A DNA stretch of 60,032 bases, filler included, from Dugesia japonica (GCA_001938525.1; 5 parts of 5 records of this genome joined end to end with filler, not necessarily neighbours in it); one strand, 5' to 3'. Counted from the whole stretch's first letter, positions 1-39,875 are shown. The notes: generated by a model not told the origin, from the letters alone. Made by a program: numbers and translations.

Positions 1-795
1 AAACTTCAATTACTGGCACTTCAATTACTAGCACGATCGACGGGGGGGGTCATCGTGCCAGTGCTGACGTATCCTACTACTAATGGATTAAAATTATTGT
101 AAAAAATAATTCTAATAAAAAATTGCATAATAAATTTAATTGATGGATTAAATTACCGATGATGTAATTACATCATANNNNNNNNNNNNNNNNNNNNNNN
201 NNNNNNNNNNNNNNNNNNNNNNNCGGCGGGGGGGTCTGCATGTGTGCTGTTCTTTAGCGCTACTATCTATCTACTCTTCATAACCATGAAAGTTGATTAA
301 AAATAAAAAAAGATAGAGGACACAAAAAGAAGAAAAAAAGAAAAAATTTTTAAATTTGGCGCCAAAAAAACTTTCGAATAAAAAGATTGAAAAAAATAAT
401 TTTTTAAAATTTAAATTTCCCGCCAAAAAACTTTTGAAATATGAATTTCTTGCTTAATTTATTTGTTAATTAAAACAAAAAATTTGAAATTCCAACAATA
501 CGAATTGGTTAATTCCAACACACACTTACCCAGCCCTCCCCGATCTCCCAAATCTTCTCCCTCTCCTCCAAGCACTCTAAAACGAACTTTAGAAATCAAT
601 AATCACTTTAAAAGTCAATATTCAGATCAAAAATCGATAATCAGATCAAAAATCAATAATTATCGATCGAGGGGGAGAGGTGAGGGGAGGGAGAGAGAGA
701 GGGGAATACAAATAAAATTTGTATTTTATTCTTATATCTATTTTGTAAAATACTAATAAAATATAACAATTTTCTGGGTACAATCTAATATATAA

Positions 796-25609: not shown

Positions 25610-26780
25610 TTTCCGACTTCCGTGGCCGACCTGGCCCTCTATGTTCCGTCGCAGTGGGCTCGGTGCTTGCGGCCGGTGTAGCTTCTTCTTTTATCGCTGC
25701 TTTTTTGCACAAGTTGGTGTGATATATTTTTGGTTTCTCCAACAGGTTTCCTTTCTTCCGCACTTTGAGATTTGTTTCCGTTACTTCGATTACTTCATAA
25801 GGTCCTTGCTATGGCCTTTTTAATTTCGATGTTGAACCGACACAAATGTCTGGTAAATTGATTAATACCATGTCGCCATTTTTAACGGAATGTTGCACTG
25901 CTGATTTATCGTGTAAATCTTTATAGCTCTCCTGGTAGAATCCTACATTCTCCTTGGCTTGTTTCATATTTTCTGCATGGTCTCCTTGAAATTTTCAGCA
26001 AAATCCGTTTCATCTTGATATTGTGTTATCGGTGGCTGGAATTCCAAGTCAATAGGCATGTTACATTCTCTCCCATACATAAGATCAAATGGCGTGTATT
26101 TGGTGGCAGGGTGCACACTCATTCGATATGCGAACAGGCATAGTTGAATATGTTTATCCCAGTTATTTTGTTCCTTCTGCGCGTAACTAGACAGCATGTT
26201 GATCAAGGTTTTATTGAACCTCTCTGTTAATCCATCCGTTTGAGGATGATAAAGTGATGTCCGTAACTGGTGTATTTTGAGGAAGTTCGATACTTCTGCT
26301 AATATATTGCTCATGAAATTTTTTCCTTGGTCGGTCAATATTTTCTTTGGTGTGCCATATCTGCTATTAAATTTTCGTACCAGAATATCGGCTATAGTTA
26401 TGGCCTTTTGATTTTTCATTGGAAATGTCTCTGGGAATTTAGATAAATAATCCATTATGGTAAGTATTTAAATATTTCCGCTTAGCGTTGGTGGTATAGG
26501 TCCAACAACATCCATAGCGATGATTTCCATTGGTGCGGCTGGTACCGCGATTGGTTTCAATAATGCTTTTACTCTTTTGCCTGTTCCTCTTCTGGCGTCA
26601 TATATTTGGCATTTAGCAATCCATTCCTTCATAGATTCTGTCATATGCGGCCAGTAATATTTCTGTCTTAATTTTGATTCGGTTTTCTTGTGGGACATAG
26701 GTCCTCCTAATACACCATTGTGATATTGTTCAAGTAGCTTATCCCGTCTTGCCTTAGGAATGACTAGCACAGTATTATCT
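25610..26780 (-). pseudogene. Integrase of the giant element, with C-terminal AT-hook-like GRPRK
   Basis: YHNGVLGG...KYYWPHM...CQ, IAMDVVGP, ILTDQGKNF, YHPQTDGLTERFNKTL, HRGPGRPRKS. Confidence 0.92.
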
Positions 26781-27049
26781 CCGTCCTGAGCTGTCAACCA
26801 TCCTTTAGTAATTGAATAACGCCCTCCTTTTTTCTTTAAATGTACCTTCATCTTGGGTTCACATTCTAACTTCTCCAAGTTATAATTTTTCATATATTTC
26901 GTGATGATCTTGATCTCCTTGTCATCCGCCTGTGCTTGTTTCAATCCATCGAAGTTTTTGTCTTCAGCGAATATAAAGTATACCATTCCTACTTTTTTCT
27001 CCAACAATTCTCGAAATGTAAAGGTTTCTGTATCATCAGGTGTGTTCTC

Positions 27050-27880
27050 CATATTTTCCGGTCCACCGATTCTGGACAGGCAATCAACATTCGAGTTTGC
27101 TTTATCCGTTTTAAACTTTAACAGGGGGCAATACTCCTGCATTGCCAGTTGCCACTTGGCTATTCGATTCCATCGTAATGGTTTCTGGGCCATAAACGTG
27201 ATTGGTAAGTGGTCCGTATAGATTAACACCTCGTGACCATGTATAAGTGATCGAAAATGTTTAGTGGCTTTCACAATAGCCATTATCTCTCGTTCTGTTG
27301 TGCTGTAATTTAACTCTGCTCCTTGAAATCTTTTGCTAAAATATGCAATTACTCTTTCCCTTCCTTGTTCATCCAATTGGCTTAATATGGCACCCATGGT
27401 GTAACCACTAGCGTCAGTGGCTAAAATAAATGGCTTTTTGAAATCAGGATGTACCAGAATTGGTGCAGTTAGTAACTTATCTCNNNNNNNNNNNNNNNNN
27501 NNNNNNNNNNNNNNNNNNNNNNNNNNNNNNNNNCCCCATATAAATGCAGTATCTTGTTTGACCAATTCTTGCATGGGTTTTGCGATTTTTGCGAAATCTT
27601 TGATAAAATTTCGATAATAGTTTGCGAGTCTTTAAAACTCCAGTATCTTGAGTACACAATTAGGAGGTGCTAAGTTCCTGATTTTCTCCGTGTTTCTTGG
27701 GTCTGGCTCTTTTCCTTTATCTGATATCAAATGGCTCAAATATGTCACTCGCATTTGGTGGGTTTCAGTTTTAGATTCCATTTACGTAATCGTACAAACA
27801 CACTACGCAAGTCATTAAGGTGCCCTTCAAAGGTTGGCGAATAAATTAATAGATAGTCGATATAAGCCATACATTGAGAT
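27050..27880 (-). pseudogene. RT C-terminal half (N-terminal half deleted), connection and RNase H
   Basis: CMAYIDYLLIYS (degenerate YxDD), LKLKPTKC, ANYYRNFIKDFAKIA, FILATDASG, NYSTTEREIMAIV, IYTDHLP. Confidence 0.9.
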
Positions 27881-28289
27881 ATGCCGTGGGTTACGTAATT
27901 CATGATCTTTCACATGGGTATGCCTCTCTAATGATTGTAATCGTAACGTTGAAAAGTTTAATATACCGTTTTTCATCAGTACGCGAAAAATATATGTTCC
28001 TAGAATACACTGTCCCATCAGGTTTTGTTTTCCATGTTGGTTCTCGTTCTTGGAACCTTATCCAATCGTTCCTTATCAAGGTGGCTGTATTGGTCATTTT
28101 CTGACGGTCTTGATTTGAATTGTTTTGTTCATTTCGATCAGTTGGTCACTGTCGCAGCCGGTTGGGTGTTGGCGGATTCCATTGTTGTGCTCGTTTCTGT
28201 TGGGTTATTATTCGATTTTTCTGATATCCTACCGGTGTATACTCTTGATCATAGTTTTCTCNTATCGTTAGTTTTCTCAAATCCAATAT

Positions 28290-28580
28290 TCCCTCCGGAC
28301 AAAGGCGTGGCAAGAGGTCCAACCCCAATAGACAGTCGAATGTTAATTCGTTCATTATTTGTAGTTTATGCCAGAAACGGATTCCGTCGCTTTCTATCGC
28401 ACATATTGCTTCTCCAACGGGTGATACTTTTTCTCCAGAGGCTGTGATGATAACTCCTTTAGTTATAGTTATTGAAGTAGTCGATAATCTTCCAATATTC
28501 TCTTATCTACTAACGTCGTGCTTGCTCCTGTATCGATAATGGCTATTACCCATCTTACGTCTATATTTATCCTTTTTTGT
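28290..28580 (-). pseudogene. Retroviral-type aspartic protease
   Basis: IAIIDTGASTT, IITASGE and FDCLLGLDLL, across small frameshifts. Confidence 0.88.
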
Positions 28581-28762
28581 AGTAGTTTTGCCCTCTGAGA
28601 AATCATCATACATACGGTCTGGGTTACTAATTTTTCATCCTCCGTGATTTGGTTATTCGGAGAACGCAGATTTTGGTCAGGCATTCTTCTGTCAATAGTT
28701 GATACATTGTTCTCTGTTAATAATGCCACATTGGAAGCTTGTGGTGGATTTATATATGAATT

Positions 28763-31105
28763 TTACATGTGACCCGATGCCCATACCTGTTGTGGTGGTT
28801 GATTCATGAGTTGCCACCCATGTTGTGGGTAGGCGTTGAAGTAAATCTGTTCTAGTGCTGGTGTATTTTCACTTCCTCCGAATTTTAACGCGTTTCTCAG
28901 TCGTTGTATTTCACTGATTTTTTCGTATTGTTGTCTTTTGAACTCTGCCTCATATTCCATGGCAGTTTTATAACTGGGTACGTGGGGTGTTCTACTGCTA
29001 TCTCCTCTATCGTCATCACTGCTGTTACTACTTTCGTCTTTGTTCTTAAATCTTTCTTTAAATTGATTGAAATATGATATTTTCTTTTTCGCATTGCTTA
29101 TTTCTTCGCACAATAGTCGGAGTTGCATAATAACTTCCTTGTCTGATCCTCTGATTTTTCCGAGTTTCCGAATAAATCGTTTTACTCTGTCGATGTCTTT
29201 GAAGTGGCTATTAAGCACCATAGTTTTGGCTAGAAATGGAAATATTCCCGTTATCATTTTCCAATTCACCTTCTTCTCTCTTTTATATATGTCAAAATAT
29301 GCAAATAATTGAGTAATCACTATTCGTGTTACCGAAATTATCAGCATAACTCCCAACAATCCTGCCATTGCTTGTCCAAATATGATGAATCGTCCCCACA
29401 TCTTCCGCATGACGTTTTCTGTGGCTTTTTGAAAGTGGTCCGCTGATAATAGTGCGTCATAATTTACTCGACCATCTATGTTGGTCCCACTAGTTAACTG
29501 CACTATATTGGATAGGATTTGCATCCTTCGGACTGGAAACAGCATATATTCCCTGGCTTTCTCTAGGTCTTCCCTGCTGTAGATTCCTCCTTTGTTTACG
29601 TCAATTGGAGTGAATTGCATACCTCCATTTAACCGTAACATGGAGAATTTCCGTGGGTTCGATTCCTACTGTCATTCGTTGCGGAAATCGTATCCATGAA
29701 CCATCGGTCATTATGTATTGCGGTCCAAATACTTTGGAGCAATTTATGATATTTGGCTTATATCCCAATGGGGATATGATTCGAGTAATTGGTTGCACAT
29801 AACGTTTTTCGTTGTTGTGGATAATTTCTATTTCATTGTAGCAGTTTTTTGGATTAGACGAGAACTCAGCATCTATGGCTTTGCATTTGTATAGATACAT
29901 TACTTCTCCGACCACTCGACCGAATTGTCCTTTTTCCAACGGGAGTAGTGGAGTGACACTATCTGGGTTTGTAACTGCCATTGCTAACTTTGTCTTTAGT
30001 ATTTCTTTATTTAATGTGCAGTCATTTTGAATGAGATCGTGGTAAATTCGTCCCATGGTGTCCTGCATTCGATGGAATAAGTTGTCCATTTTATTATTGG
30101 CGTATAGATGCAATTTAATATCTTGTGACATTACTGCGGCTTGCGCTGTTTTTATTCGATGTTCTGATACGAATATTCCTTTATAGTTCGTTTTATACAC
30201 TATTTGACCACACTTTGACATCGAATTGCCTTTAATTAACCGGATGGTCTCATCCTGTTCCGAATACATTAGCACTGTAGGCGTTGTGTGCCATTGTTGA
30301 TCGTATGATCTTGGACCTGACCTTATCGTTTCCTTGAGATGATCTATCCTATCTTTTAGATTACCCTCCTTTGGGTCTTGATCAATAGGTGTTATAGCGC
30401 GGTGTCCTTGGTATTCATTGAACATTGCTTCCTTTAGGTGTGCTAACTTACAATCCTGGTGATCTACTTTGTTTGTCAATGTTGATGTACCTGTATTACA
30501 TGATCCATCTGCTGCTTTGCAATACGACCTTCCTTTCATAGTCAAATCTATGCCTCGTATTCCTTGAGTTCTACTGTATAGGTTTCGATTGCTACCGCAT
30601 ACTGCCAGACCTTTCCTCGTATAGTGTATGTACCATATTCNNNNNNNNNNNNNNNNNNNNNNNNNNNNNNNNNNNNNNNNNNNNNNNNGTCAATTACATG
30701 CCCTTTCTTGGCGATGACTTGAGTCCCATGTTTGATGGTGATCTTTCCTGTGGCAAATCTTTCATCACATTGTTGTCCAGTTAAATGAACGGGGTGTCTC
30801 ACTGTCCCTGGATCAATTATTGAAGTGTAGCCTTGATACCCACAATGAAATATAAATGTTTTTACCGTTACCGCACACTCGCGTACTTGGGCCTTATAGT
30901 AATCAGATTCTTGATATAAATGGTAGATGGAATTATTACGTAGTGAGATTTTCTCCGGGTTTGCATCGGGGCATTNNNNNNNNNNNNNNNNNNNNNNNNN
31001 NNNNNNNNNNNNNNNNNNNNNNNNNNNNNNNNNNNNNNNNNNNNNNNNNNNNNNNNCCATCATTAAGAATAACAAGAGTATTGTAGTGGTTAACGCTTGC
31101 CAAGA
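28763..31105 (-). pseudogene. Envelope glycoprotein, chuvirus-G-like (class III fusion) with signal, Cys-rich ectodomain, TM and tail
   Basis: Signal WQALTTTILLLFLMM. Ectodomain motifs LYQES...ECAV...FHCG, DCTLNKEILKTKLA, GRVVGEVMYLYKC, CYNEI, QPITRII, NCS...PQY, GIYSREDL...MLFP. TM GRFIIFGQAMAGLLGVMLIISV (~29398-29294). Frameshifts at ~30548 and ~29640. Confidence 0.8.
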
Positions 31106-31213
31106 GTTTCTGCGAGGCCAACGTGTCAATCCATTCTCGATCTCATTTAACTGATCCCGAACAATCCTGATTACCCTAGTTGCATTTTCGTGAGATGACT
31201 GAGGCTTAGCGCA

Positions 31214-31606
31214 TATGGCCTCAATAAACTTTTTCCACCCCCCATGCTGCTTTATTAACGGCACTATCTTCTTCTGCATTAGATCCACTATTGGTAATTT
31301 ACTGAGAATGAAGTTTTTTGACGGCTTGCTTCTAGCGATTGATAGATGCGTTTGATTAATCAGATGTGCTATAGATACTACTATTCTTCCCTTTGTTGGC
31401 TGATCTTGTAACAATTCATCCATTACACCTTCTAAATTATCTCTTGCACTATGACTAGTACCTTTAGTTGCAGGGAATTTCTTAATAGCTGCTTCTATTT
31501 CTTTGGCCAAAGGTCTGAGATTATCTGATAGTTGAAATTTCCCATTCCATATTTTTAATTCCAGATATAGCATTAGCAGTAACTGCCGTATTACTACTTC
31601 GGTTGG
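31214..31606 (-). pseudogene. Bcl-2-like domain within the polyprotein
   Basis: BH3-like LRPLAKEIE, BH1-like VMDELLQDQPTKGRIVVSI (ELLQDQPTKGRIV core at ~31417-31379) and BH2-like LIKQHGGWKKF (GGW at 31243-31235), in canonical order and spacing. Confidence 0.75.
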
Positions 31607-32328
31607 TATGTCATCATCTGTCGAATTTTCGTGGTATCTATCTTGTGATACCGTTGCTAATCGCTTAGTTTGATGAGTTATGGATGTGGCTAATCGTTTT
31701 TGTTTCAATGCTTCTTCCTCCTCTGGATTTCCCGGAGGTTTTGTTCTTGGTCGACCTCTATTACGAGGTTGCGTAATTGTTTCCGCATCCACTCGGGTAC
31801 GTACTGGTTTTGGCGGTACTTCTTCTTCTTCGGTTTCTATTGGATTTTCCATCTTTACGTGGTGGTTTGTATCCATTAGATCATCCATTACTGAGGATGG
31901 TAATTCTTTTGCTATTCTACTTAATATTGTTGATAATGGTTGGTCTTCCAATACGTCTTCCTCTTCCAAGTTAACCTTGCTAGGGTCGTATTTTTTACTT
32001 TGGGCTGGCTCTTTAACCTTTATTTCTTCACTTTTCCTAGTTGGAGGAGAATATTTTGTAATTTGCAACTCGTTTTCATCTTCCTCTGATTCGTCTGCTG
32101 ATGGTGATCCGAATATTTCGCGTTCCCATTCTTGGCTTGTTTTGGGAGTTTCCTTGGTTTCCCGGGAACTTCAGCGCTCCCAGATTGATCTGTGGTAGGT
32201 TTCAATATTTTACTAGCCGCTAATTGTGTGCGGTGTTTATATGCTTTTAGCATACTTGAGGTCTCTCCCATTATTGGTCTGGTTTTATCTGCTGCTTTAT
32301 AAGGATCTGCGTCTTTTCGAGTGAGAGT

Positions 32329-35300
32329 GCCTCCTAATTCGGGAAAAATCCCCAACGTTTTATGTTTAATTAAATCTATTTTCATTAGTCCAATTGGTAT
32401 GGTATCTTCCACTAGTCCACCTTCATCCACGAGTTTGTATGGTGGTTTAAATGGCTACTTGTCTCGTAGGTGTTTTACCGTATTATATACCGGTATTTTA
32501 ACCGTGATTTTGTCCCCTTCTGGATAGATTATTCTGAATTTAACTTCGAATGGCGTGGTTTGTCCCATCTCCGCTTTCCACCATTTAACCAGAATTTTAT
32601 TAAACTGAATGGGATCCCATGTATGAGATATTTTAATGGCCAAGATTAATCGTCGCAACTTTCTAAGATCTTCTACTGCCAGATCTTGTTGTAAGGCTAT
32701 ATTGATCGTTGTATGATTTCTAGCGTTATTAACTTATCACCTACTAGCAACTCGAACAATTTCGGTAAATTGTCTTCTGGTTTCTCGTCTTTGACCGGGG
32801 TGTTGGTTAGAGCTGCTACCATCTCTACTCGTTGTTTATTTTGCTCTTGTTTAGGGAGCTTGGCTCCGGCGAATACTAATGGGTGTATCTCTTCTATGTA
32901 ATATTCCACTACTTCTCTAGCTTCTTGTTTCCATATCTCCTCCGAGACCCGTGGTCGTCGTCTCTTCTCATCCTTTGCTGTTACGTAGATTTTTAATTTA
33001 TTACCTGGCCAAACCCTCATATATTTCACTGGTAATCTCATTTGATCTAGTTCTATTACCTGGTTGTAATAAAGTACTATATCATCTTCCTGCAATAATG
33101 GTTGCATTCTGGTTTCTTCTTCTTCAAGGTTACTCTGTTGGTTCATAAATTTTATAATCCTTTTCCGCAACTTAGACCATGGTTTGATCATTTAACCCTG
33201 CCACTGGATTTCGCTTTTATCCGGAAATTCGATTGTTACTGCAACGGCTTCATTGGTTATCATTCGAACTGCTTTATTTAATATTGCATCCATTATGTCT
33301 TCAGGCATTTGACTTATAGCTCGTAATTGATTTAGCTTTAGAACTAATTGAATGACTTTGNNNNNTCTTAATAGTTCCAAGTTTTCTTCCAAGGTTAAGA
33401 GTATTTTCATTATTACTCGCGCCAGACTTCCCCATGTTTTACTGTCTTCCCATAACTCAATATTTATCTCCATTGTTCTGTCATCGACTACTTCGAATAA
33501 CTGTCCACTGTTGATTTCTTGTTCGTATAGTTCCTCTAGTTGTTGTAATACTTCCCCCATAGATTTAACTGGGCCTGGAATGTAATCGCCTGGTTTTTGG
33601 ATTTGAAGAAATGTATTTTCACCAGGTCTTAGCCCTACGTCCATTAGATGTTGTTTTCCTTCAAATTTTATGGAGAATCTCAAATGGTCGGTCGTGATTG
33701 CATAATTTTTCTGTTGGTCAGCTATATCTAGTGATTCTATAATTTCCTGTAATTCCCCAGCTGATGTACTATTAAAATGTGGTATATGCATGACAGCCAT
33801 ATCCGGTTCCTTCCTTGATTTCTTGTTTCGTGTCAGATATTCTATTGTGACCTGAAAATTCTCTCCTTTGGCGCTTGTCTTCACTGCACCGATATACGGC
33901 TTGATTACTGATTCCCATTTAGCACGTTCTTCTCTTGCTATTTCAGTATACTTTGCCAGATCCATTAGTAAATTTAATGCCTTCCAAAATGCTGTCCGAG
34001 GTTTTCTTTCCTGGAAATAACAGAAATCAGAAATTATCTTCGATATCCACTCTGCCTGCTGGGAACTGAAAGGACCAGCGAATTCCTGTTTAAATGGTAT
34101 CAACCGAGGTTGGCTAATATCCTCTGAGCATCCTTCCTCCTGGTCCTCTTCATCGGAGGTTAGGTCCATGGTGTCATGGTCATTACCCCGAACCATGTTT
34201 ATCTGGGCTTTGTTTTCGCCATAAGTGTTTATAAGTCGTTCATTCTCTACCGGTAGTATTTCTTGTAGATATAGGCTCATCATAATTAATATGAATTGAT
34301 CGGTATCCGGCGTTTTTGGTATCGGTATGTCGATGGTCATTTTACGTGATGTTAATTTAATGTCTGTGATCTCCCCTGGTTTGATATCATGTAGAAAGAT
34401 GTGGTCCCCTTTCTCGGCTTATATAATCATTGTTGCTCCTGCCTGCATTTTATAGGACTTGAGCGATTTTGGCCATAGCCATTTCTTGATTGTTTTTATA
34501 ATATGGTTGATCGTTAATCCTTCCAGCGTTATCATATCTACCTTTTTTATGCTTCTATCTTTATTAAGGAGGCTGACTCTGATAGAATAGTCGGATATGG
34601 TAGATGTATTTTGCACTTCCTCTTCGTATAAGTTTTTCTCTTTCCACCATTGTGCTCGAGCCCACAAGCTGAGTTGTCCATATATTGCCAAATCCCGTAG
34701 ATTATTAATCATTTTCCAATATACTTTGATATTCACGATTGGTCGAGTTTCTCGGGTTACTCTTAGTAGATCATTGATAGCGTGAAACGTGGCGGATTCC
34801 TCCGTTATTGGTTTCGTATAATTCATTCGAATATCACGTATTGTTGGTGTGCCTTCTGGGAATACGACGGATTTTGTAGTAATTATTGGCAAGTTATCGA
34901 TATTCTGTATTTTCTGATTCTCTTTTACTTGTTCCTTTATGCCATACAATACTTCGGATACGTACAATTCTGTTATCTCTTCCATTCGCTCCTCGAGATC
35001 TGGTGATTGATCCGTCCGCGGCTCCTCGTCTACATCTAACTCACATATTTATCCAGGCTTTGCGTTGCATTGAAATATGTGTTTGTCCTCGTCGTCGGTC
35101 TCAACGAATTTGCCATTTATGAACACAGGTACCATGTTTAGTCCTTGTTCTCGCCACTTATCGGTAATGGCATCCATTAAATCCATCATGGTTATTCCTT
35201 GTGGTTTTAATCTACTATATTTAGTCAGTTCCTGTTCATGTTTATCTATATTTAAATATAATTTATAATCCCGAATTTTGGTAGTTGCCAATATTTCTTC

Positions 35301-36130
35301 GGCGTACTTCTGTCTAATCATGAGCCACTGGTTCTCGATTTCCTCGATAATTTCTAATCCATCATATATGTCGTAAATTCTATTCATTATCATCCAATAG
35401 GTTTCTCGAGGTAATTTTTCCTTCTCTATCTGTACTCAGTTAACTATTTCTTCCACTTTACGCATTGCTACCACCTCTCTTGATGGCATTTGCCGCATTC
35501 TTATCATGTTGCATTTGCCTTCTCTTCTCTCTAATCTTTGTTTGAGAAAATCATAACGCGTCATCAACAACTGTTTTCTCTCCTCCATTGTTAGTTTGTC
35601 TTTCTTCCCAAGTACTGTGGAAAGTATTTCGATTTTAATCGGTTCTAACCCTTGTTTATATAGGTACTCCATTTCTTCCATGATTTCTAAAGCTGATCTT
35701 CCGGTTTTTGCTATCCAGATGTCGTAGTCGATACCAGGGTGTTTGTCCAATACTACGATTTCAATGTCCTCTCCTGTTTTTACTCCAAAATCATATAGAT
35801 GTTTCTTTCTGGCGTTAAAATATACAATAGCACTTGGAGTGCATACATATTTATCGGTTATGCATGGATAACCGGCTTGCTTAAGCGCGGCTTCCAGATC
35901 TTCTACCATTAATCATGTGAGTGTCAGTTTCATATTTCCCTCCGGGTTATACAGCCATACTTAGTAATCCGATAATCTCATGCTGGATATTACCCACTCG
36001 GAATGCACTAGTAACCATTCTGTCCAATCGCTTTCGCACTCGGTGATTAGTTGTATCACTTCCAATAATTCAACCAATCGATTTGTCAACTTTAGGTATA
36101 CTTCTTTCTTTATCGTATCATTAGTAGACG
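32329..36130 (-). repeat. Six diverged protein repeats (~190-250 aa each): helical domain + ubiquitin-like fold
   Basis: Recurring LYxxEI, (Y/F)WxxxNxLxD...W and DYxV motifs. Unit ends are HLYDFGVKTGEDIEI, HIFQCNAKPG*ICEL, HIFLHDIKPGEITDI, HLMDVGLRPGENTFL, VKYMRVWPGNKLKI and EDTIPIGLM...FPELGG. Confidence 0.65.
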
Positions 36131-36149
36131 CTCGAGCTCTAGAATAGGT

Positions 36150-39100
36150 AGAGTTTTCTCGATTAGCAGTGGAGTTTTTGATCCGAAGATTAATAGATTA
36201 TATGATAGGGCTGGTGATATTGAGAGTATTTGAGCAGCTTATTATCTTTTTGCAGAAGTTAAATGACAGCGAATCGTATTTTCTGATATNNNNNNNNNNN
36301 NNNNNNNNNNNNNNNNNNNNNNNNNNNNNNNNNNNNNNNNNNNNNNNNNCTTTAATCATTTTGGTATTTTTAATATGATTTAAGAAGTCCTTGTGATTTG
36401 AGATAAGAACTGAGCCAAGAGGGATATCTTAGTCAGTAATATGGTTGAGAAAGATATTAGCCTGATGTGTGAGAATTTTCCCATTGTAAGATGATTTTTG
36501 AATATTACCAGGAGTAAAACCGATTTACAGGCTGAAGAGAAAGTAGTGGAAGTAGCTACTATTATTCCGGATAGCACATTTGCTATAGAATTTATGGAAT
36601 TAGAGCAGTTACAAGACGCTCAATCTATTATAAATAAATTAGGAAACGAGATCTTTTCAGTTCCCAGATGGGATGTAAACATTAAAAGCATATTGAGTTG
36701 GATGTTGACATTACATACTTCAACTGAAGTTCTAAAAGAGGTAATACCATTAATATTACTGTTGGTTGATAAACCAAGCAGTTATCAAAATGAAATTAGA
36801 ATTTTAATTAGAAAAGATAGGGAAGCCATGAGGCATGATCCTGTCAGACAGGCCCATTTTATTGTTGACACAAGAGTACCCAGTGAGGTGGTACCAAAAA
36901 TAAAGAGATATTCGTGTTTCACAAATGTGTTAAAACTGAAAGCGGGTATCGGAATAACATACCCACAAACGTGTTTGATAGTAATTTGGGGTAATCAAGT
37001 TGATGATCATGTAATCATGTTGGATGTTTACAAACTAAAACTACGCTAGTCAATGTGTTGATAGTAGAGCCATCTGATCACCATTGGACTATGTTGCGCT
37101 TGCCGGAAGTATCCGAGGTTGCACAGAATCAAGAAGCATCAATAGTGTAAGAGACGGAAATGTATATAACTCGACAAAATCAAGAAATGCCAGTGGATTT
37201 GGATGAGCCAGAACCGGTCAATTTACTGAATATACCACAAAAAATATTCTCTGAGAAAGCAAGTGATACCTGAAATGTACAAGGCAACAATCTGGGAGCA
37301 TGCACCTCCAGAGAATTAGAAAAGAGAAGACAACCAAGAGTTAAAAAGAGAGGTAGACCGAAAAAGAATACTAATTCTTAGCCGGTGGACATAAATCCGA
37401 GCCAGGGCATTAAAAGCCATATTTGGTGAAATATATCAAGGGAATATAGGGAATGAACCAGCAATGTCAGATACATGCTGTAAAATTCTGCAATTAATCA
37501 GAGTATTAAAACCCGAGTTAAAAATTGAAAAAGTTGGACGTTGGGATCCAAGCAAATTAGCCTTGTCACTAAAGACAGTTATTAGAAAGTAACTAAGGAA
37601 GTTGCCTGATAAAAATAAAAGGAACACAATTCATACGTTACCTGCTCAAGGTATTACAAATGGGTGAGTTTGTTTTCAGAGCAAACTGGCTGGGATATTC
37701 ACATATCCACAAGCTTATTCGCGTATCGTAACAAAGCACATTCAATTACATGTTATTTACCGTTTTATTTGATGGATCTGAGAAATAGCAACATGCCGGT
37801 GGATCTTGAATTTCAAACACCATTATCGCAGTACCTTGATGAGAGCAAGTATCTGCTCGAATTGAAAGATAGGATGCAAATAACTTGGCCAAAAGCTAAC
37901 TTAAGTATTAGATATTCGCAAAAAGGAATGAAAGAGGCATTTGATAAAAAGACTAAACAGCACGAATATAAAATGCAAGATTTAGTAATGCTCGAAGGGC
38001 ATAATAATACAAAAGGTTTGTCACTGAAATTGATACGAAATTATAAGGGACCTTATGAGGTACTAAAAACGACAGAAACTAATTTAGGCTTACAATTGTG
38101 TTCTAACAGAAAAACGGAACCTATACTAGTACATGTAAATAGGTGCAAAAGGTATTATACAATTGATGAGCAAGTTAAAAACAAAGAGACAAAAGTCAAG
38201 GAAAAGACAAAAAGGTCTTCAACAAACATTCAAGAATCTTGCAATAGATATCCACTAAGATCACAAACGTATTCGCAAACATTGATAATTATTGCAATAA
38301 TCAGTTGTCTTAATGTGGTCAGTGCGCAGATAGAATTTCAACCCAAAGCAGTACCTATGGAGAAAATAATATTACGTAGATGGTATTACAAATTCTCTAT
38401 AAGGACAACGGTCGAATTGACATTTAATTACCACATAGGGTTTATTTCCGATGGAANAGTGACAAATTACAAGAAAGAACACAGGAATAGAGAGGTTAAT
38501 ATAACTAATTTAAAGGCTAACTATACCCATTCTATGCAGTGTTGGTATCAGTAATTCAAATCCGTATATTGGGAGACTGTACGAACCACCGGATGGTATC
38601 TTACGACTTTGCCAATAAACAAAGTAGTAATATCGTACAAAAAATCATGTCTATTTTTCACGAAAGTACATACAGAGNNNNNNNNNNNNNNNNNNNNNNN
38701 NNNNNNNNNNNNNNNNNNNNNNNNNNNNNNNNNNNNNNNNNNNNNNNNTATCGGGAGAGGGTTTTTTGGACTCAACTCTGATATAAAAATTAGATATTAT
38801 CGACAGCAAGAGGGATCAACAGCCACATATATGGTATGCTCAGAAAAAAACTTAGTAAAAAACCAATTTCCAGAAAATTAAATGCAAATTTCTGGAATAG
38901 AATTAAAATATATCAGATAAATGTTAGCTTGGAAAAGGCAGCACTTAAAATTGCCTTAGCACAGTGTAATTGTTCTACTTCGACTCCGTTAAATAACAAG
39001 GCTAACAGCAAGATGCAAAAACGTATCCAGATGATAGTAGGTGGACCCTGAACAAAGGAATGCAGTACCATCGTACATTTGCTCTATCTTCCAAAGTTTA

Positions 39101-39700
39101 TGCAGACATTGAATCCGGCGATCCTTTTGTAATTTCGCACCGATACGGAACAAATGTTGCTCTTGACCCATTGGCTATGGATTCAATTATAGAAGAAGGT
39201 CCTAGCCTTAGAACGGAAGACCTGTCTAAAGTGGACACTTTAAGTAAATCTAGAGATCCAAATCTTTGGCAAAAACAAGTTGCCAAGTTTAAATGACCAA
39301 TTCAATATTACTGTGATCGTCCGGTCCAACACACAGCTATTACGGAATCCCACCTCGATAAAAATCGTTTGGAAGTCAGTGGACAACCATTTATCAATTC
39401 GCCATCTGTGTATGTGTACGAACATACAGAAGTCCCTTTCGTTGTAACTCCCAGATTTACCAAGCGAAAGAAAAAATTAGTAAAGGAAATTCTTAATAAA
39501 GTAGAAGAAAATTCAAAAAGGAAGAAATTAATTCCTTGTGTATCCAAACAGAATAAAGAAACTGAAAAGAACGAAGAAGGAATTTCCTAGAAGAAGTCTC
39601 AATCAAAGAAGAAGAAGATCCTCAAGTGAGCACTAGTCCGTCGAGGCTATGATCCGCTCTACTCAACATCTCGAACACTAGCATGTAATGATATGAACCG
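36150..39700 (+). mobile_element. Second, diverged giant Gypsy-type element with a large internal deletion: Ubl-like, AT-hook, start of Bcl-2-like region // integrase C-terminus, signal-peptide ORF
   Basis: KRGRPKK at 37346-37366. ILQLIRVLKPELKI...LRKLP resembles IRQLLLMLYLELKI...IKKFP of the minus element. WDIHISTSLFAYR...NMPVDLEFQ resembles WDKHIQLCLFAYR...NMPIDLEFQ. Also GPY and VHVNRCK. Confidence 0.75.
37664..38554 (+). pseudogene. Integrase C-terminus fused in frame to a signal-peptide-led unknown protein
   Basis: YKGPYEV and VHVNRCKRYY, then RYPLRS-QTYSQ-TLIIIAIISCLNVVSA-QIEF. Confidence 0.7.
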
Positions 39701-39875
39701 TTCGAGCAATATTCGANAACAATCAATAAACAATTAATCTGATTTTTTTTGTGATCCAATTGCAGTTTATATGTATATATTTGACATTTTTAATTGTGTG
39801 CTATGTGATTTGAACTATTAATCATCATTAGTGTTTTGTACAAATAATATATTTTACTATTCATCGCTTATTTTT

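What the first reader, a model, noticed from the sequence alone, without database searches (positions are those of the whole stretch)
25610..36130. Giant retrovirus-like Gypsy element encoding Ubl repeats, Bcl-2, a fusion glycoprotein and pol as one ~3,500-codon polyprotein
Seen: about a dozen minus-strand ORFs join into one frame when isolated stops and small frameshifts are bridged. The order is 6x(helical+Ubl), AT-hook, Bcl-2-like, hydrophobic segment, glycoprotein, TM, tail, PR, RT, RH, IN, AT-hook. Known: env-bearing LTR elements (errantiviruses, retroviruses) normally have gag-pol-env with env downstream. Giant cargo-carrying LTR elements (Burro) are described in planarians, so this may be a relative. 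Inference: a potentially infectious lineage combining membrane fusion with host apoptosis and ubiquitin manipulation. This copy is dead (RT N-half deleted, stops). No gag or LTRs are visible because both ends are truncated.
Basis: partly seen in the sequence, partly recalled or inferred. Interest (0 to 1): 0.93.

Follow-up and report, generated by a model that had tools for sequence, protein, structure and literature searches.

The report
Decayed Burro-like giant Gypsy provirus fragment
This is a dead, truncated copy of a giant retrovirus-like Gypsy element whose odd layout (Bcl-2-like domain and viral fusion glycoprotein placed in front of the polymerase in one huge protein) is real but was already described for the planarian "Burro" elements in 2018-2019.

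Summary
A chain of minus-strand ORFs runs from about 36130 to the piece's edge at 25610. In order it encodes a divergent internal repeat, an AT-hook-like motif, a Bcl-2-like domain, a hydrophobic segment, a Monjiviricetes-type fusion glycoprotein with a TM segment and tail, then PR, an RT remnant, RH, IN and a second AT-hook-like motif.

Relatives are uninterrupted metagenomic ORFs of 2,100-4,844 aa. They carry env-PR-RT-RH-IN in one frame, some with Gag/CCHC upstream and some with a Bcl-2-like domain directly before env. The order is therefore a family trait and not a chimera.

The Ubl fold of the repeats could not be confirmed. The models were low-confidence and there were no Pfam or PDB hits.

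This copy is dead. I counted at least 10 changes of frame and 9 in-frame stops. Most of the RT domain is missing, both ends are cut, and no gag or LTR is present.

The layout Gag...Ubi2/SUMO-like-BCL2-Env-PR-RT-RH-IN in one roughly 5,000-aa ORF is published for planarian Burro/GYPSM1 (PMC6431247). GAG-ENV-POL Ty3/gypsy elements are catalogued in PMC13524379. The novelty claim falls; this is at most a new member of a known kind.

I did not compare the sequence with Burro itself, and the host was not identified.

The parts
25610..36130 (-). Fragment of a Burro-like giant Ty3/gypsy element. It is one broken polyprotein gene, cut at the 3' side by the piece's edge. Its 5' side ends within about 160 bases of a 60-N run.
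   Evidence: Chain of minus-strand ORFs. AT-skew and GC-skew change sign near 36100. Breaks counted, not listed: at least 10 changes of frame and at least 9 in-frame stops. No LTR-like direct repeat in the piece.
32460..36090 (-). Divergent internal repeat region made of helix-rich plus beta-rich units. The fold is unproven.
   Evidence: blastp between pieces E 3e-6 to 3e-4. Shuffle test z 4.2-9.2 for four pairs. Alignments A2-A4. AF2 pLDDT 44 with helix-helix then beta-beta-alpha-beta-beta-beta order. No Ubl hit by Foldseek, Pfam or PDB profile. No homologues in the 5.8-billion-protein search.
31745..31756 (-). GRP-type AT-hook-like basic motif upstream of the Bcl-2-like domain.
   Evidence: Read directly from the translation.
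31178..31621 (-). Bcl-2-like helical domain. The BH1-BH2 region is matched.
   Evidence: Pfam Bcl-2 E 5e-4, 21 bits, below the cut-off of 31.4. Homologous stretch in relatives P0004, P0007, P0107 and weakly P0016, always just before env. P0007 gives its own weak Pfam Bcl-2 hit. Profile A1 hits 91 PDB sequences; all 60 listed are Bcl-xL/Bcl-2, best E 8e-4. Foldseek top hits are all Bcl-2 family, TM about 0.5, from a low-confidence model.
31057..31100 (-). Hydrophobic segment in the same ORF as the Bcl-2-like domain, running into the 81-N run. Proposed to be both tail-anchor and internal signal-anchor for env.
   Evidence: Mean Kyte-Doolittle 2.29 over the last 13 residues. Relatives have exactly one hydrophobic segment at the start of the env match, even when 350-1,340 residues precede it.
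29285..31056 (-). env: Monjiviricetes-type (chuvirus-like) fusion glycoprotein. It is broken and holds two N runs. A TM segment lies at 29294-29392.
   Evidence: PF24664 in three collinear pieces, profile positions 56-130, 245-467 and 472-578. About 95% of the env of relatives is covered. 701 library hits. TM segment.
28770..29284 (-). Cytoplasmic tail between the env TM segment and PR.
   Evidence: Same ORF as the env C-part, with no family match.
25610..28730 (-). pol, broken. It holds PR (DTGA at 28523-28534), an RT remnant (only the C-terminal part of the domain), RH (27131-27481), IN zinc-binding domain (26594-26761), IN core and C-end, and a GRP-type motif at 25620-25631. It runs off the piece.
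   Evidence: RVT_1 profile 142-190 only, E 8e-7. RT_RNaseH 9.5e-36, Integrase_H2C2 1e-13, rve 9e-7. Coverage of relatives' domains: RT 0.33-0.41, RH 1.00, IN 0.97-1.00. Motifs.
37619..38551 (+). Neighbour: C-terminal integrase region plus downstream tail of a second element of the same family, in the opposite orientation.
   Evidence: phmmer E 1.6e-48 to P0151 (3151-3309), 3.9e-44 to P0003, 2.2e-35 to P0008. E 1e-18 to the minus element's own IN piece.
36495..37046 (+). Neighbour: ORF weakly similar to the region after the CCHC knuckle of relative P0010. It may be a further fragment of the second element.
   Evidence: phmmer E 8e-4. No Pfam family.

Best explanation
The region is a decayed, truncated copy of a Burro-like giant Ty3/gypsy endogenous retrovirus-like element. 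In intact members of this kind, one very long ORF encodes Gag, accessory 'cargo' modules, a Bcl-2-like domain, a class-III-type fusion glycoprotein captured from a mononegavirus/chuvirus-like source, and then PR-RT-RH-IN.

Proposed working of an intact member (inference). The N-terminal Gag, cargo and Bcl-2-like parts stay in the cytosol. The single hydrophobic segment after the Bcl-2-like domain acts as an internal signal-anchor. It threads the glycoprotein ectodomain into the ER lumen and leaves the Bcl-2-like domain tail-anchored on the cytosolic face. The env TM segment brings the chain back, so the tail and PR-RT-RH-IN are cytosolic again. The element's protease, and probably host signal peptidase, then cut the polyprotein. 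The Bcl-2-like module would keep the producing cell alive. The repeat modules may engage the ubiquitin/SUMO machinery, as has been suggested for Burro.

Shown: domain identities, their order, and their conservation in single ORFs of relatives. Inferred: topology, processing, and anti-apoptotic and ubiquitin-related roles.

The copy in the window can do none of this. It is a fossil lying head-to-head with a fragment of a second copy.
For: - Domain order in the window.
- Relatives with env-PR-RT-RH-IN in one uninterrupted ORF: P0003 2,855 aa, P0008 2,627 aa, P0015 3,243 aa, P0020 2,146 aa, P0151 4,844 aa.
- Gag marks before env: weak Ty3_capsid plus zf-CCHC in P0020, zf-CCHC in P0010 and P0107, Retrotrans_gag in P0014.
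- Bcl-2-like domain directly before env in P0004, P0007, P0107 and weakly P0016. It is supported as Bcl-2 family by Pfam, a PDB profile and Foldseek.
- One hydrophobic segment at the env start and one near its end in relatives.
- Published Burro ORF1 layout: Gag ... Ubi2/SUMO-like - BCL2 - Env (hits to mononegavirus fusion glycoproteins, in frame between gag and pol) - PR - dUTPase-like - RT - RH - IN, with decaying copies carrying stops and frameshifts in Dugesia japonica (PMC6431247).
- GAG-ENV-POL Ty3/gypsy elements with gB-type ENV in Platyhelminthes, Nematoda and Bryozoa, some with the ectodomain flanked by two TM domains (PMC13524379).
- Decay counts. RT loss.
Against: - No sequence comparison with Burro/GYPSM1 itself was made.
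- The host is unknown.
- The best library relative is only 45% identical in env.
- MATH, BIR, ankyrin, Smc and dUTPase-like motifs reported for Burro were not found in the piece.
- Gag and LTRs are absent from the piece.
- The Ubl fold is unproven.
- The repeat region has no detectable homologue in relatives.
- The Bcl-2 evidence is a set of individually sub-threshold signals.
- The junction between the Bcl-2-like domain and env is hidden by an N run, so a stop there cannot be excluded in this copy.
Confidence: 0.8

Rival explanations
1. It belongs to a separate lineage of GAG-ENV-POL gB/chuvirus-type 'errantivirus-like' Ty3/gypsy elements, possibly from a host that is not a planarian. On this view it resembles Burro only through shared ancestry of the env-pol core or through parallel capture of cargo. 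It would then be a new family of a known kind, with its own tandem repeat module.
For: - The best relatives are 45% identical or less and come from environmental metagenome contigs, one mis-binned as a Flavobacteriaceae MAG.
- GAG-ENV-POL elements are reported as polyphyletic across several phyla (PMC13524379).
- Burro's MATH, BIR, ankyrin and dUTPase motifs were not found here.
- The repeat region is an orphan.
Against: - The specific sub-order Ubl-like - BCL2 - Env - PR is exactly the one published for Burro.
- The piece lacks the 5' third of the element, where most Burro cargo lies, so the absence of those motifs says little.
Confidence: 0.15
2. It is a chance juxtaposition or nested insertion. 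On this view a non-retroviral endogenous chuvirus-like glycoprotein, a host Bcl-2 gene fragment and an ordinary Gypsy pol merely lie next to each other, or were joined by the assembler across the N runs.
For: - There are three N runs inside the region and one just beyond its 5' end.
- Chuvirus-like glycoprotein EVEs are common in invertebrate genomes (PMC7642597).
Against: - The same order occurs in uninterrupted ORFs of many mutually divergent relatives.
- Relatives' alignments run collinearly across each N run.
- The Bcl-2-like domain shares its ORF with the hydrophobic segment, and its closest kin are in relatives of the element, not in cellular proteins.
- Strand and base-skew are uniform from 25610 to about 36100.
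Confidence: 0.03
3. The upstream repeat region does not belong to the element. It would instead be a decayed host gene, or another repeat, into which the element's 5' part was inserted or beside which it was assembled.
For: - No homologue of the repeat region was detected in any relative or in the large protein library.
- No family match.
Against: - It has the same strand and skew, with no spacing from the Bcl-2-like ORF.
- Burro has a Ubi2/SUMO-like motif at this very position.
- Relative P0107 has CCHC - weak ubiquitin-family hit (E 0.03) - Bcl-2-like - env.
- Cargo regions between gag and env differ widely among relatives.
Confidence: 0.07

Closest known systems
Burro / GYPSM1 giant Gypsy-like LTR retroelements of planarians (Grohme et al. 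2018; Jurka 2007; Arkhipova and Yushenova 2019, PMC6431247)
   Same: A Gypsy-type PR-RT-RH-IN. Env with mononegavirus-like fusion glycoprotein homology lies between gag and pol, in frame in intact members. A BCL2-like motif sits immediately before env, and a ubiquitin/SUMO-like motif sits before that. The polyprotein runs to thousands of codons. Decaying copies with stops and frameshifts are known in some species.
   Different: Here the pre-Bcl-2 region is a tandem array of about 4-6 divergent units, not a single annotated Ubi2/SUMO-like motif. No MATH, BIR, ankyrin, Smc or dUTPase-like motif was detected. Gag and LTRs are missing because the copy is truncated. Sequence identity to Burro was not measured and the host is unknown.
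GAG-ENV-POL 'errantiviruses' with HSV gB-type ENV in Platyhelminthes, Nematoda and Bryozoa (Chary and Hayashi, eLife 2026, PMC13524379)
   Same: A Ty3/gypsy pol with env placed upstream of pol. The glycoprotein is class-III-type; the paper describes the chuvirus-like glycoprotein as structurally similar to gB. The ectodomain is sometimes flanked by two TM segments.
   Different: That paper treats gag, env and pol as ORFs in a row and limits the distance between LTRs to 14 kb. It does not mention Bcl-2-like or ubiquitin-like cargo, or a fused polyprotein.
Anakin: mosquito BEL/Pao elements with a captured chuvirus glycoprotein (Dezordi et al. 2020, PMC7642597)
   Same: The env is a Jingchuvirales/Monjiviricetes-type glycoprotein captured by an LTR retroelement.
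   Different: A different superfamily (BEL/Pao). The conventional position of env after pol is from my own knowledge, not from a tool result. No Bcl-2-like cargo is reported.
Errantivirus sensu stricto (Drosophila gypsy, ZAM)
   Same: An env-bearing Ty3/gypsy element.
   Different: Those have gag-pol-env order, a baculovirus F-type env expressed from a separate spliced ORF, and a size of about 7-8 kb (order and env type; the remainder from general knowledge).
Cellular and viral Bcl-2 family proteins
   Same: The BH1-BH2 region is matched and an all-helical bundle is predicted, followed by a C-terminal hydrophobic segment.
   Different: The domain is embedded in a retroelement polyprotein. All scores are below curated thresholds. 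Function is untested.

Membership tests
Ty3/gypsy (Metaviridae-like) LTR retroelement | pol domain order PR-RT-RH-IN with Gypsy-type RNase H and H2C2 integrase | tested here: met
   DTGA protease motif, RVT_1 (partial), RT_RNaseH 9.5e-36, Integrase_H2C2 1e-13 and rve 9e-7, in that order.
Ty3/gypsy (Metaviridae-like) LTR retroelement | Flanking long terminal repeats | tested here: inconclusive
   No long direct repeat in 25610-39875. Both ends of the element are cut, by the piece's edge and by an N run, so LTRs could not be present.
Ty3/gypsy (Metaviridae-like) LTR retroelement | Gag with capsid and CCHC knuckle | tested here: not met
   No gag or CCHC match in any window piece. They are present upstream of env in relatives P0010, P0014, P0020 and P0107. 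The window copy is 5'-truncated.
Burro-like giant Gypsy elements | env (mononegavirus-like fusion glycoprotein) between gag and pol, in frame with pol | tested here: met
   PF24664 lies upstream of PR in the window. In-frame fusion is seen in intact relatives. It cannot be shown in this broken copy.
Burro-like giant Gypsy elements | BCL2-like motif directly upstream of env | tested here: met
   All signals are consistent, though each one is sub-threshold.
Burro-like giant Gypsy elements | Ubi2/SUMO-like motif (PF11976) upstream of BCL2 | tested here: inconclusive
   Repeat units are present and the predicted strand/helix order is compatible with a beta-grasp. There is no Pfam, PDB-profile or Foldseek support.
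Burro-like giant Gypsy elements | Further cargo (MATH_TRAF_C, BIR, ankyrin, AIR1, Smc) and dUTPase-like between PR and RT | tested here: not met
   No such Pfam hits in the window pieces. The 5' part is missing and the PR-RT stretch is heavily decayed, so this has little weight. Ankyrin is seen in relative P0151.
Burro-like giant Gypsy elements | Sequence relatedness to Burro-1..4 / GYPSM1; planarian host; total length over 30 kb | not tested
   The source organism is not identifiable from the piece, and the element is truncated.
GAG-ENV-POL gB-type errantivirus-like elements (PMC13524379) | ENV ORF upstream of a Ty3/gypsy POL; class III (gB-like) fusogen | tested here: met
   The order is met. 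The fold class was not modelled here. Pfam family PF24664 matches, relative P0005 gives a weak Glycoprotein_B hit at E 0.014, and the paper states that the chuvirus-like glycoprotein is gB-like.
Errantivirus sensu stricto | gag-pol-env order with F-type env | tested here: not met
   env lies upstream of pol and is of the Monjiviricetes type.
Bcl-2 family | Helical bundle with BH1-BH2 region scoring above the Pfam gathering threshold | tested here: inconclusive
   21 bits against a cut-off of 31.4. Profile hits to Bcl-xL at E 8e-4. The Foldseek top 50 are all Bcl-2 family, but the model pLDDT is 49.
Ubiquitin-like (beta-grasp) domains | beta-grasp fold or significant match to a Ubl family | tested here: inconclusive
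   AF2 pLDDT 44. No Ubl among the Foldseek hits. No Pfam hit at E up to 10. The best PDB profile hits have E of at least 1.

The most novel reading that the evidence does not exclude
The copy may represent a so far undescribed branch of the Burro-like kind, with relatives widespread in environmental (aquatic) metagenomes and so perhaps beyond planarians. In this branch a tandem array of ubiquitin-like modules precedes a Bcl-2-like domain whose tail-anchor doubles as the signal-anchor of the glycoprotein. That would give a membrane-threaded Gag-cargo-Bcl-2-Env-Pol polyprotein. Some relatives also carry up to six tandem protease-like domains.
Probability: 0.2. Interest if true: 0.5.

Novelty: new member of a known kind. 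Interest (0 to 1): 0.3.

Why it matters
The element class is interesting: a retrovirus-like element that places a captured RNA-virus fusogen and an apoptosis regulator inside its Gag-Pol polyprotein. That class was described for planarian Burro elements in 2018-2019, and the env-before-pol order was catalogued across phyla in 2023-2026. This window adds only a dead fragment.

Two modest additions come from the comparison set. First, uninterrupted ORFs of up to 4,844 aa in metagenomes show that the fused env-pol layout is a real coding arrangement and not a product of gene prediction or reconstruction. Second, the Bcl-2-like/env adjacency recurs in several mutually divergent relatives.

Tried and rejected
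- Large-library word search with the Bcl-2-like ORF and with the longest repeat ORF: no hits.
- The same search with the RH-IN piece: only unnamed metagenome proteins, so the host stays unidentified.
- phmmer of the Bcl-2-like ORF against the PDB: nothing. Only the 3-sequence profile worked.
- AF2 models of the Bcl-2-like region and of one repeat unit: both low-confidence. Foldseek on the repeat unit gave kinesin and coiled-coil noise, which I rejected as meaningless.
- Pfam at E up to 10 on the repeat pieces and a PDB profile of the beta-rich part: nothing usable. One hit, the kindlin F0 domain at E 1.4, is not significant.
- Profiles of the repeat against relatives: at best marginal (P0016, E 0.0014).
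- env against PDB sequences: no relative.
- LTR, inverted-repeat, tandem-repeat and Rfam scans: empty.
- The supplements of PMC13524379 and the Grohme 2018 paper are not held.
- Literature searches for Bcl-2 in Metaviridae or retrotransposons found nothing beyond the Burro review.

Rejected ideas:
- A chimeric assembly or EVE-plus-Gypsy juxtaposition, contradicted by relatives.
- A host Bcl-2 gene, because the closest kin sit in element relatives.

I stopped and relied on tool results only.

Full report
**What is in the sequence.**
Between about 36130 and the piece's edge at 25610, twelve minus-strand ORFs of at least 80 aa follow each other almost without spacing. With shorter pieces, about twenty segments make up the chain. 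AT-skew and GC-skew are uniform over this span and change sign near 36100.

Pfam scans of the pieces, each searched apart, give the following:
- A weak Bcl-2 match (PF00452, E 5e-4, 21 bits, curated cut-off 31.4).
- Three collinear matches to the Monjiviricetes fusion glycoprotein family PF24664 (E 2.5e-11, 1.2e-35, 6.5e-20; profile positions 56-130, 245-467, 472-578).
- Only the C-terminal part of RVT_1 (E 8e-7).
- RT_RNaseH (9.5e-36), Integrase_H2C2 (1e-13) and a partial rve (9e-7).

Other features read from the translations:
- A DTGA protease motif.
- A 33-residue hydrophobic TM stretch after the glycoprotein.
- A hydrophobic stretch at the end of the Bcl-2-like ORF.
- Two GRP-type AT-hook-like motifs.

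**Assembly gaps (tested first, as asked).**
Besides the three N runs named in the finding, the piece holds a 5-N run inside the repeat region, a 60-N run at 36290-36349 just beyond the element's 5' end, a 71-N run and three single Ns.

For each named gap I asked whether single alignments of relatives run across it. I printed only counts:
- 81-N run: 7 relatives span it, with 27-30 residues opposite 28 X.
- 48-N run: 23 relatives span it, with 15-20 residues (mode 16) opposite 16 X.
- 50-N run: 7 relatives span it, with 11 residues opposite 17 X.

The flanks of every gap are collinear parts of one gene. Whether they are in frame cannot be known, because gap lengths are estimates. For the same reason a stop between the Bcl-2-like domain and env cannot be excluded in this copy. 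I did not try to fill any gap.

**Relatives.**
An exhaustive HMMER search with the 314-aa glycoprotein piece found 701 proteins, 15 of them below E 1e-30. Many of the best hits are very long. They come from metagenome assemblies (ENA), on contigs of 6-31 kb. One is deposited as a 'Flavobacteriaceae bacterium' MAG protein. Such gene calls are made without introns, which I infer from that kind of source and did not check for these records. On that reading they are true uninterrupted ORFs.

Pfam scans show env followed by PR (often several tandem copies), RT, RH and IN in one ORF in:
- P0003 (2,855 aa)
- P0008 (2,627 aa)
- P0015 (3,243 aa)
- P0020 (2,146 aa)
- P0012 (env to RH only; 1,251 aa, no integrase match)
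- P0151 (4,844 aa, with six protease-like stretches, ankyrin repeats and a C2H2 finger)

Gag marks precede env in four relatives: a weak Ty3_capsid plus zf-CCHC in P0020, zf-CCHC in P0010 and P0107, and Retrotrans_gag in P0014.

Window pieces cover about 95% of the env of these relatives, all of RH and IN, but only 33-41% of the RT domain. The gag-env-pol order in one frame is therefore a trait of the family. It is not a chimera or a nested insertion.

**The Bcl-2-like domain.**
The single-sequence searches found nothing. The following lines of evidence do support it:
- The window domain matches stretches of P0004 and P0007 that lie directly before their glycoproteins.
- P0007 gives its own weak Pfam Bcl-2 hit.
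- A local profile adds P0107 and, weakly, P0016, again directly before env.
- A three-sequence profile (A1) hits 91 distinct PDB sequences; all 60 listed are Bcl-xL or Bcl-2, best E 8e-4.
- The AlphaFold model is all-helical but low-confidence (pLDDT 49). Even so, its top 50 Foldseek hits are all Bcl-2 family members, including helminth and placozoan ones, with TM about 0.5.

I accept the assignment as likely. No single test passes a curated threshold.

In relatives there is exactly one hydrophobic segment between the upstream part and the glycoprotein, even when 350-1,340 residues precede it, and one more near the env C-end. This underlies the topology I propose.

**The repeat region.**
Pieces of the 3.6-kb upstream region resemble each other (blastp E 3e-6 to 3e-4). 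Four pairs reach z 4.2-9.2, with 0 of 200 shuffles reaching the observed score. Alignments suggest a unit made of a helix-rich part and a beta-rich part. Four to five units have sequence support.

Evidence on the fold:
- The AlphaFold model of one unit has pLDDT 44. Its element order (two helices, then beta-beta-alpha-beta-beta-beta) is compatible with a beta-grasp.
- Foldseek returns no ubiquitin-like protein.
- Pfam finds nothing at E up to 10.
- A PDB profile finds nothing significant.
- The large library has no homologue, and relatives show none.
- Relative P0107 has a weak ubiquitin-family hit (E 0.03) between its CCHC knuckle and its Bcl-2-like domain.

The Ubl reading is plausible but unproven.

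**State of this copy.**
Counting only, without places, the chain needs at least 10 changes of frame and holds at least 9 in-frame stops:
- Repeat region: 2 changes of frame and 5 stops.
- Bcl-2-like/env: 2 changes of frame.
- env tail to PR: 1 change of frame and 1 stop.
- PR to RT: 4 changes of frame and 1 stop.
- RH-IN-C-end: 1 change of frame and 2 stops.

The N-terminal ~60% of the RT domain has no counterpart. Gag and LTRs are absent. The 3' end is cut by the piece's edge. The 5' end stops within about 160 bases of a 60-N run, so that truncation may be an assembly join and not a biological one.

**Neighbours.**
The plus strand at 37619-38551 encodes the C-terminal integrase region and the following tail of a second member of the family (E 1.6e-48 to P0151; E 1e-18 to the minus element's own IN piece). 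The ORF at 36495-37046 is weakly similar to the region after the CCHC knuckle of P0010 (E 8e-4). The piece thus holds two fragments head-to-head. No RNA family, tandem repeat or long inverted repeat was found.

**Comparison with what is known.**
Arkhipova and Yushenova (2019, PMC6431247) describe planarian Burro/GYPSM1 elements as follows:
- They are Gypsy-like, over 30 kb, and present in thousands of copies.
- They have one ORF1 of 4,873-5,140 aa.
[quoted passage not shown] - PR, a dUTPase-like motif, RT, RH and IN follow.
- They also note decaying Burro fragments with stops and frameshifts in Dugesia japonica, and they already propose interference with apoptosis and ubiquitination.

Chary and Hayashi (PMC13524379) catalogue GAG-ENV-POL Ty3/gypsy elements with gB-type ENV in Platyhelminthes, Nematoda and Bryozoa. 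They state that the chuvirus-like glycoprotein is structurally gB-like, and they note ectodomains flanked by two TM segments.

**Verdict.**
The claim of novelty is not. I file this as a decayed member of the Burro-like kind (confidence 0.8).

Membership in Burro proper is untested:
- I made no sequence comparison with Burro.
- The host is unknown.
- Several Burro cargo motifs were not seen in this truncated piece.

I could not tell whether that counts as fetching a virus of animals.

Noticed in passing
window 37619-38551 (+): C-terminal integrase region plus conserved downstream tail of a second element of the same family, in the opposite orientation (E 1.6e-48 to P0151). After the integrase part comes a hydrophobic stretch, also within the region conserved in relatives.
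   Followed up: partly
window 36495-37046 (+): 183-aa ORF with no Pfam family, weakly similar (E 8e-4) to the region after the CCHC knuckle of relative P0010. If it belongs with the integrase fragment downstream, the second element has lost everything from env to RH.
   Followed up: partly
window 33361-33365, 36290-36349, 38678-38748, and single Ns at 28262, 38457, 39717: N runs not mentioned in the finding. The 60-N run lies within about 160 bases of the minus element's 5' end, so the '5' truncation' may be a scaffold join.
   Followed up: partly
relatives P0151, P0010, P0003, P0002, P0014 (proteins): Several tandem protease-like domains between env and RT, with up to six matched stretches in P0151. 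P0151 also has ankyrin repeats and a C2H2 finger, and the relatives carry 600-1,550-aa tails after the integrase with no family match.
   Followed up: no
relative P0008: A 2,627-aa env-pol ORF of this eukaryotic retroelement family is deposited as a hypothetical protein of a 'Flavobacteriaceae bacterium' MAG, on a 9-kb contig. This is probably a binning contaminant.
   Followed up: no
window 38551-39875 (both strands): Only short ORFs, with no match to relatives or to Pfam. The content is unexplained and may be a decayed tail of the second element.
   Followed up: no
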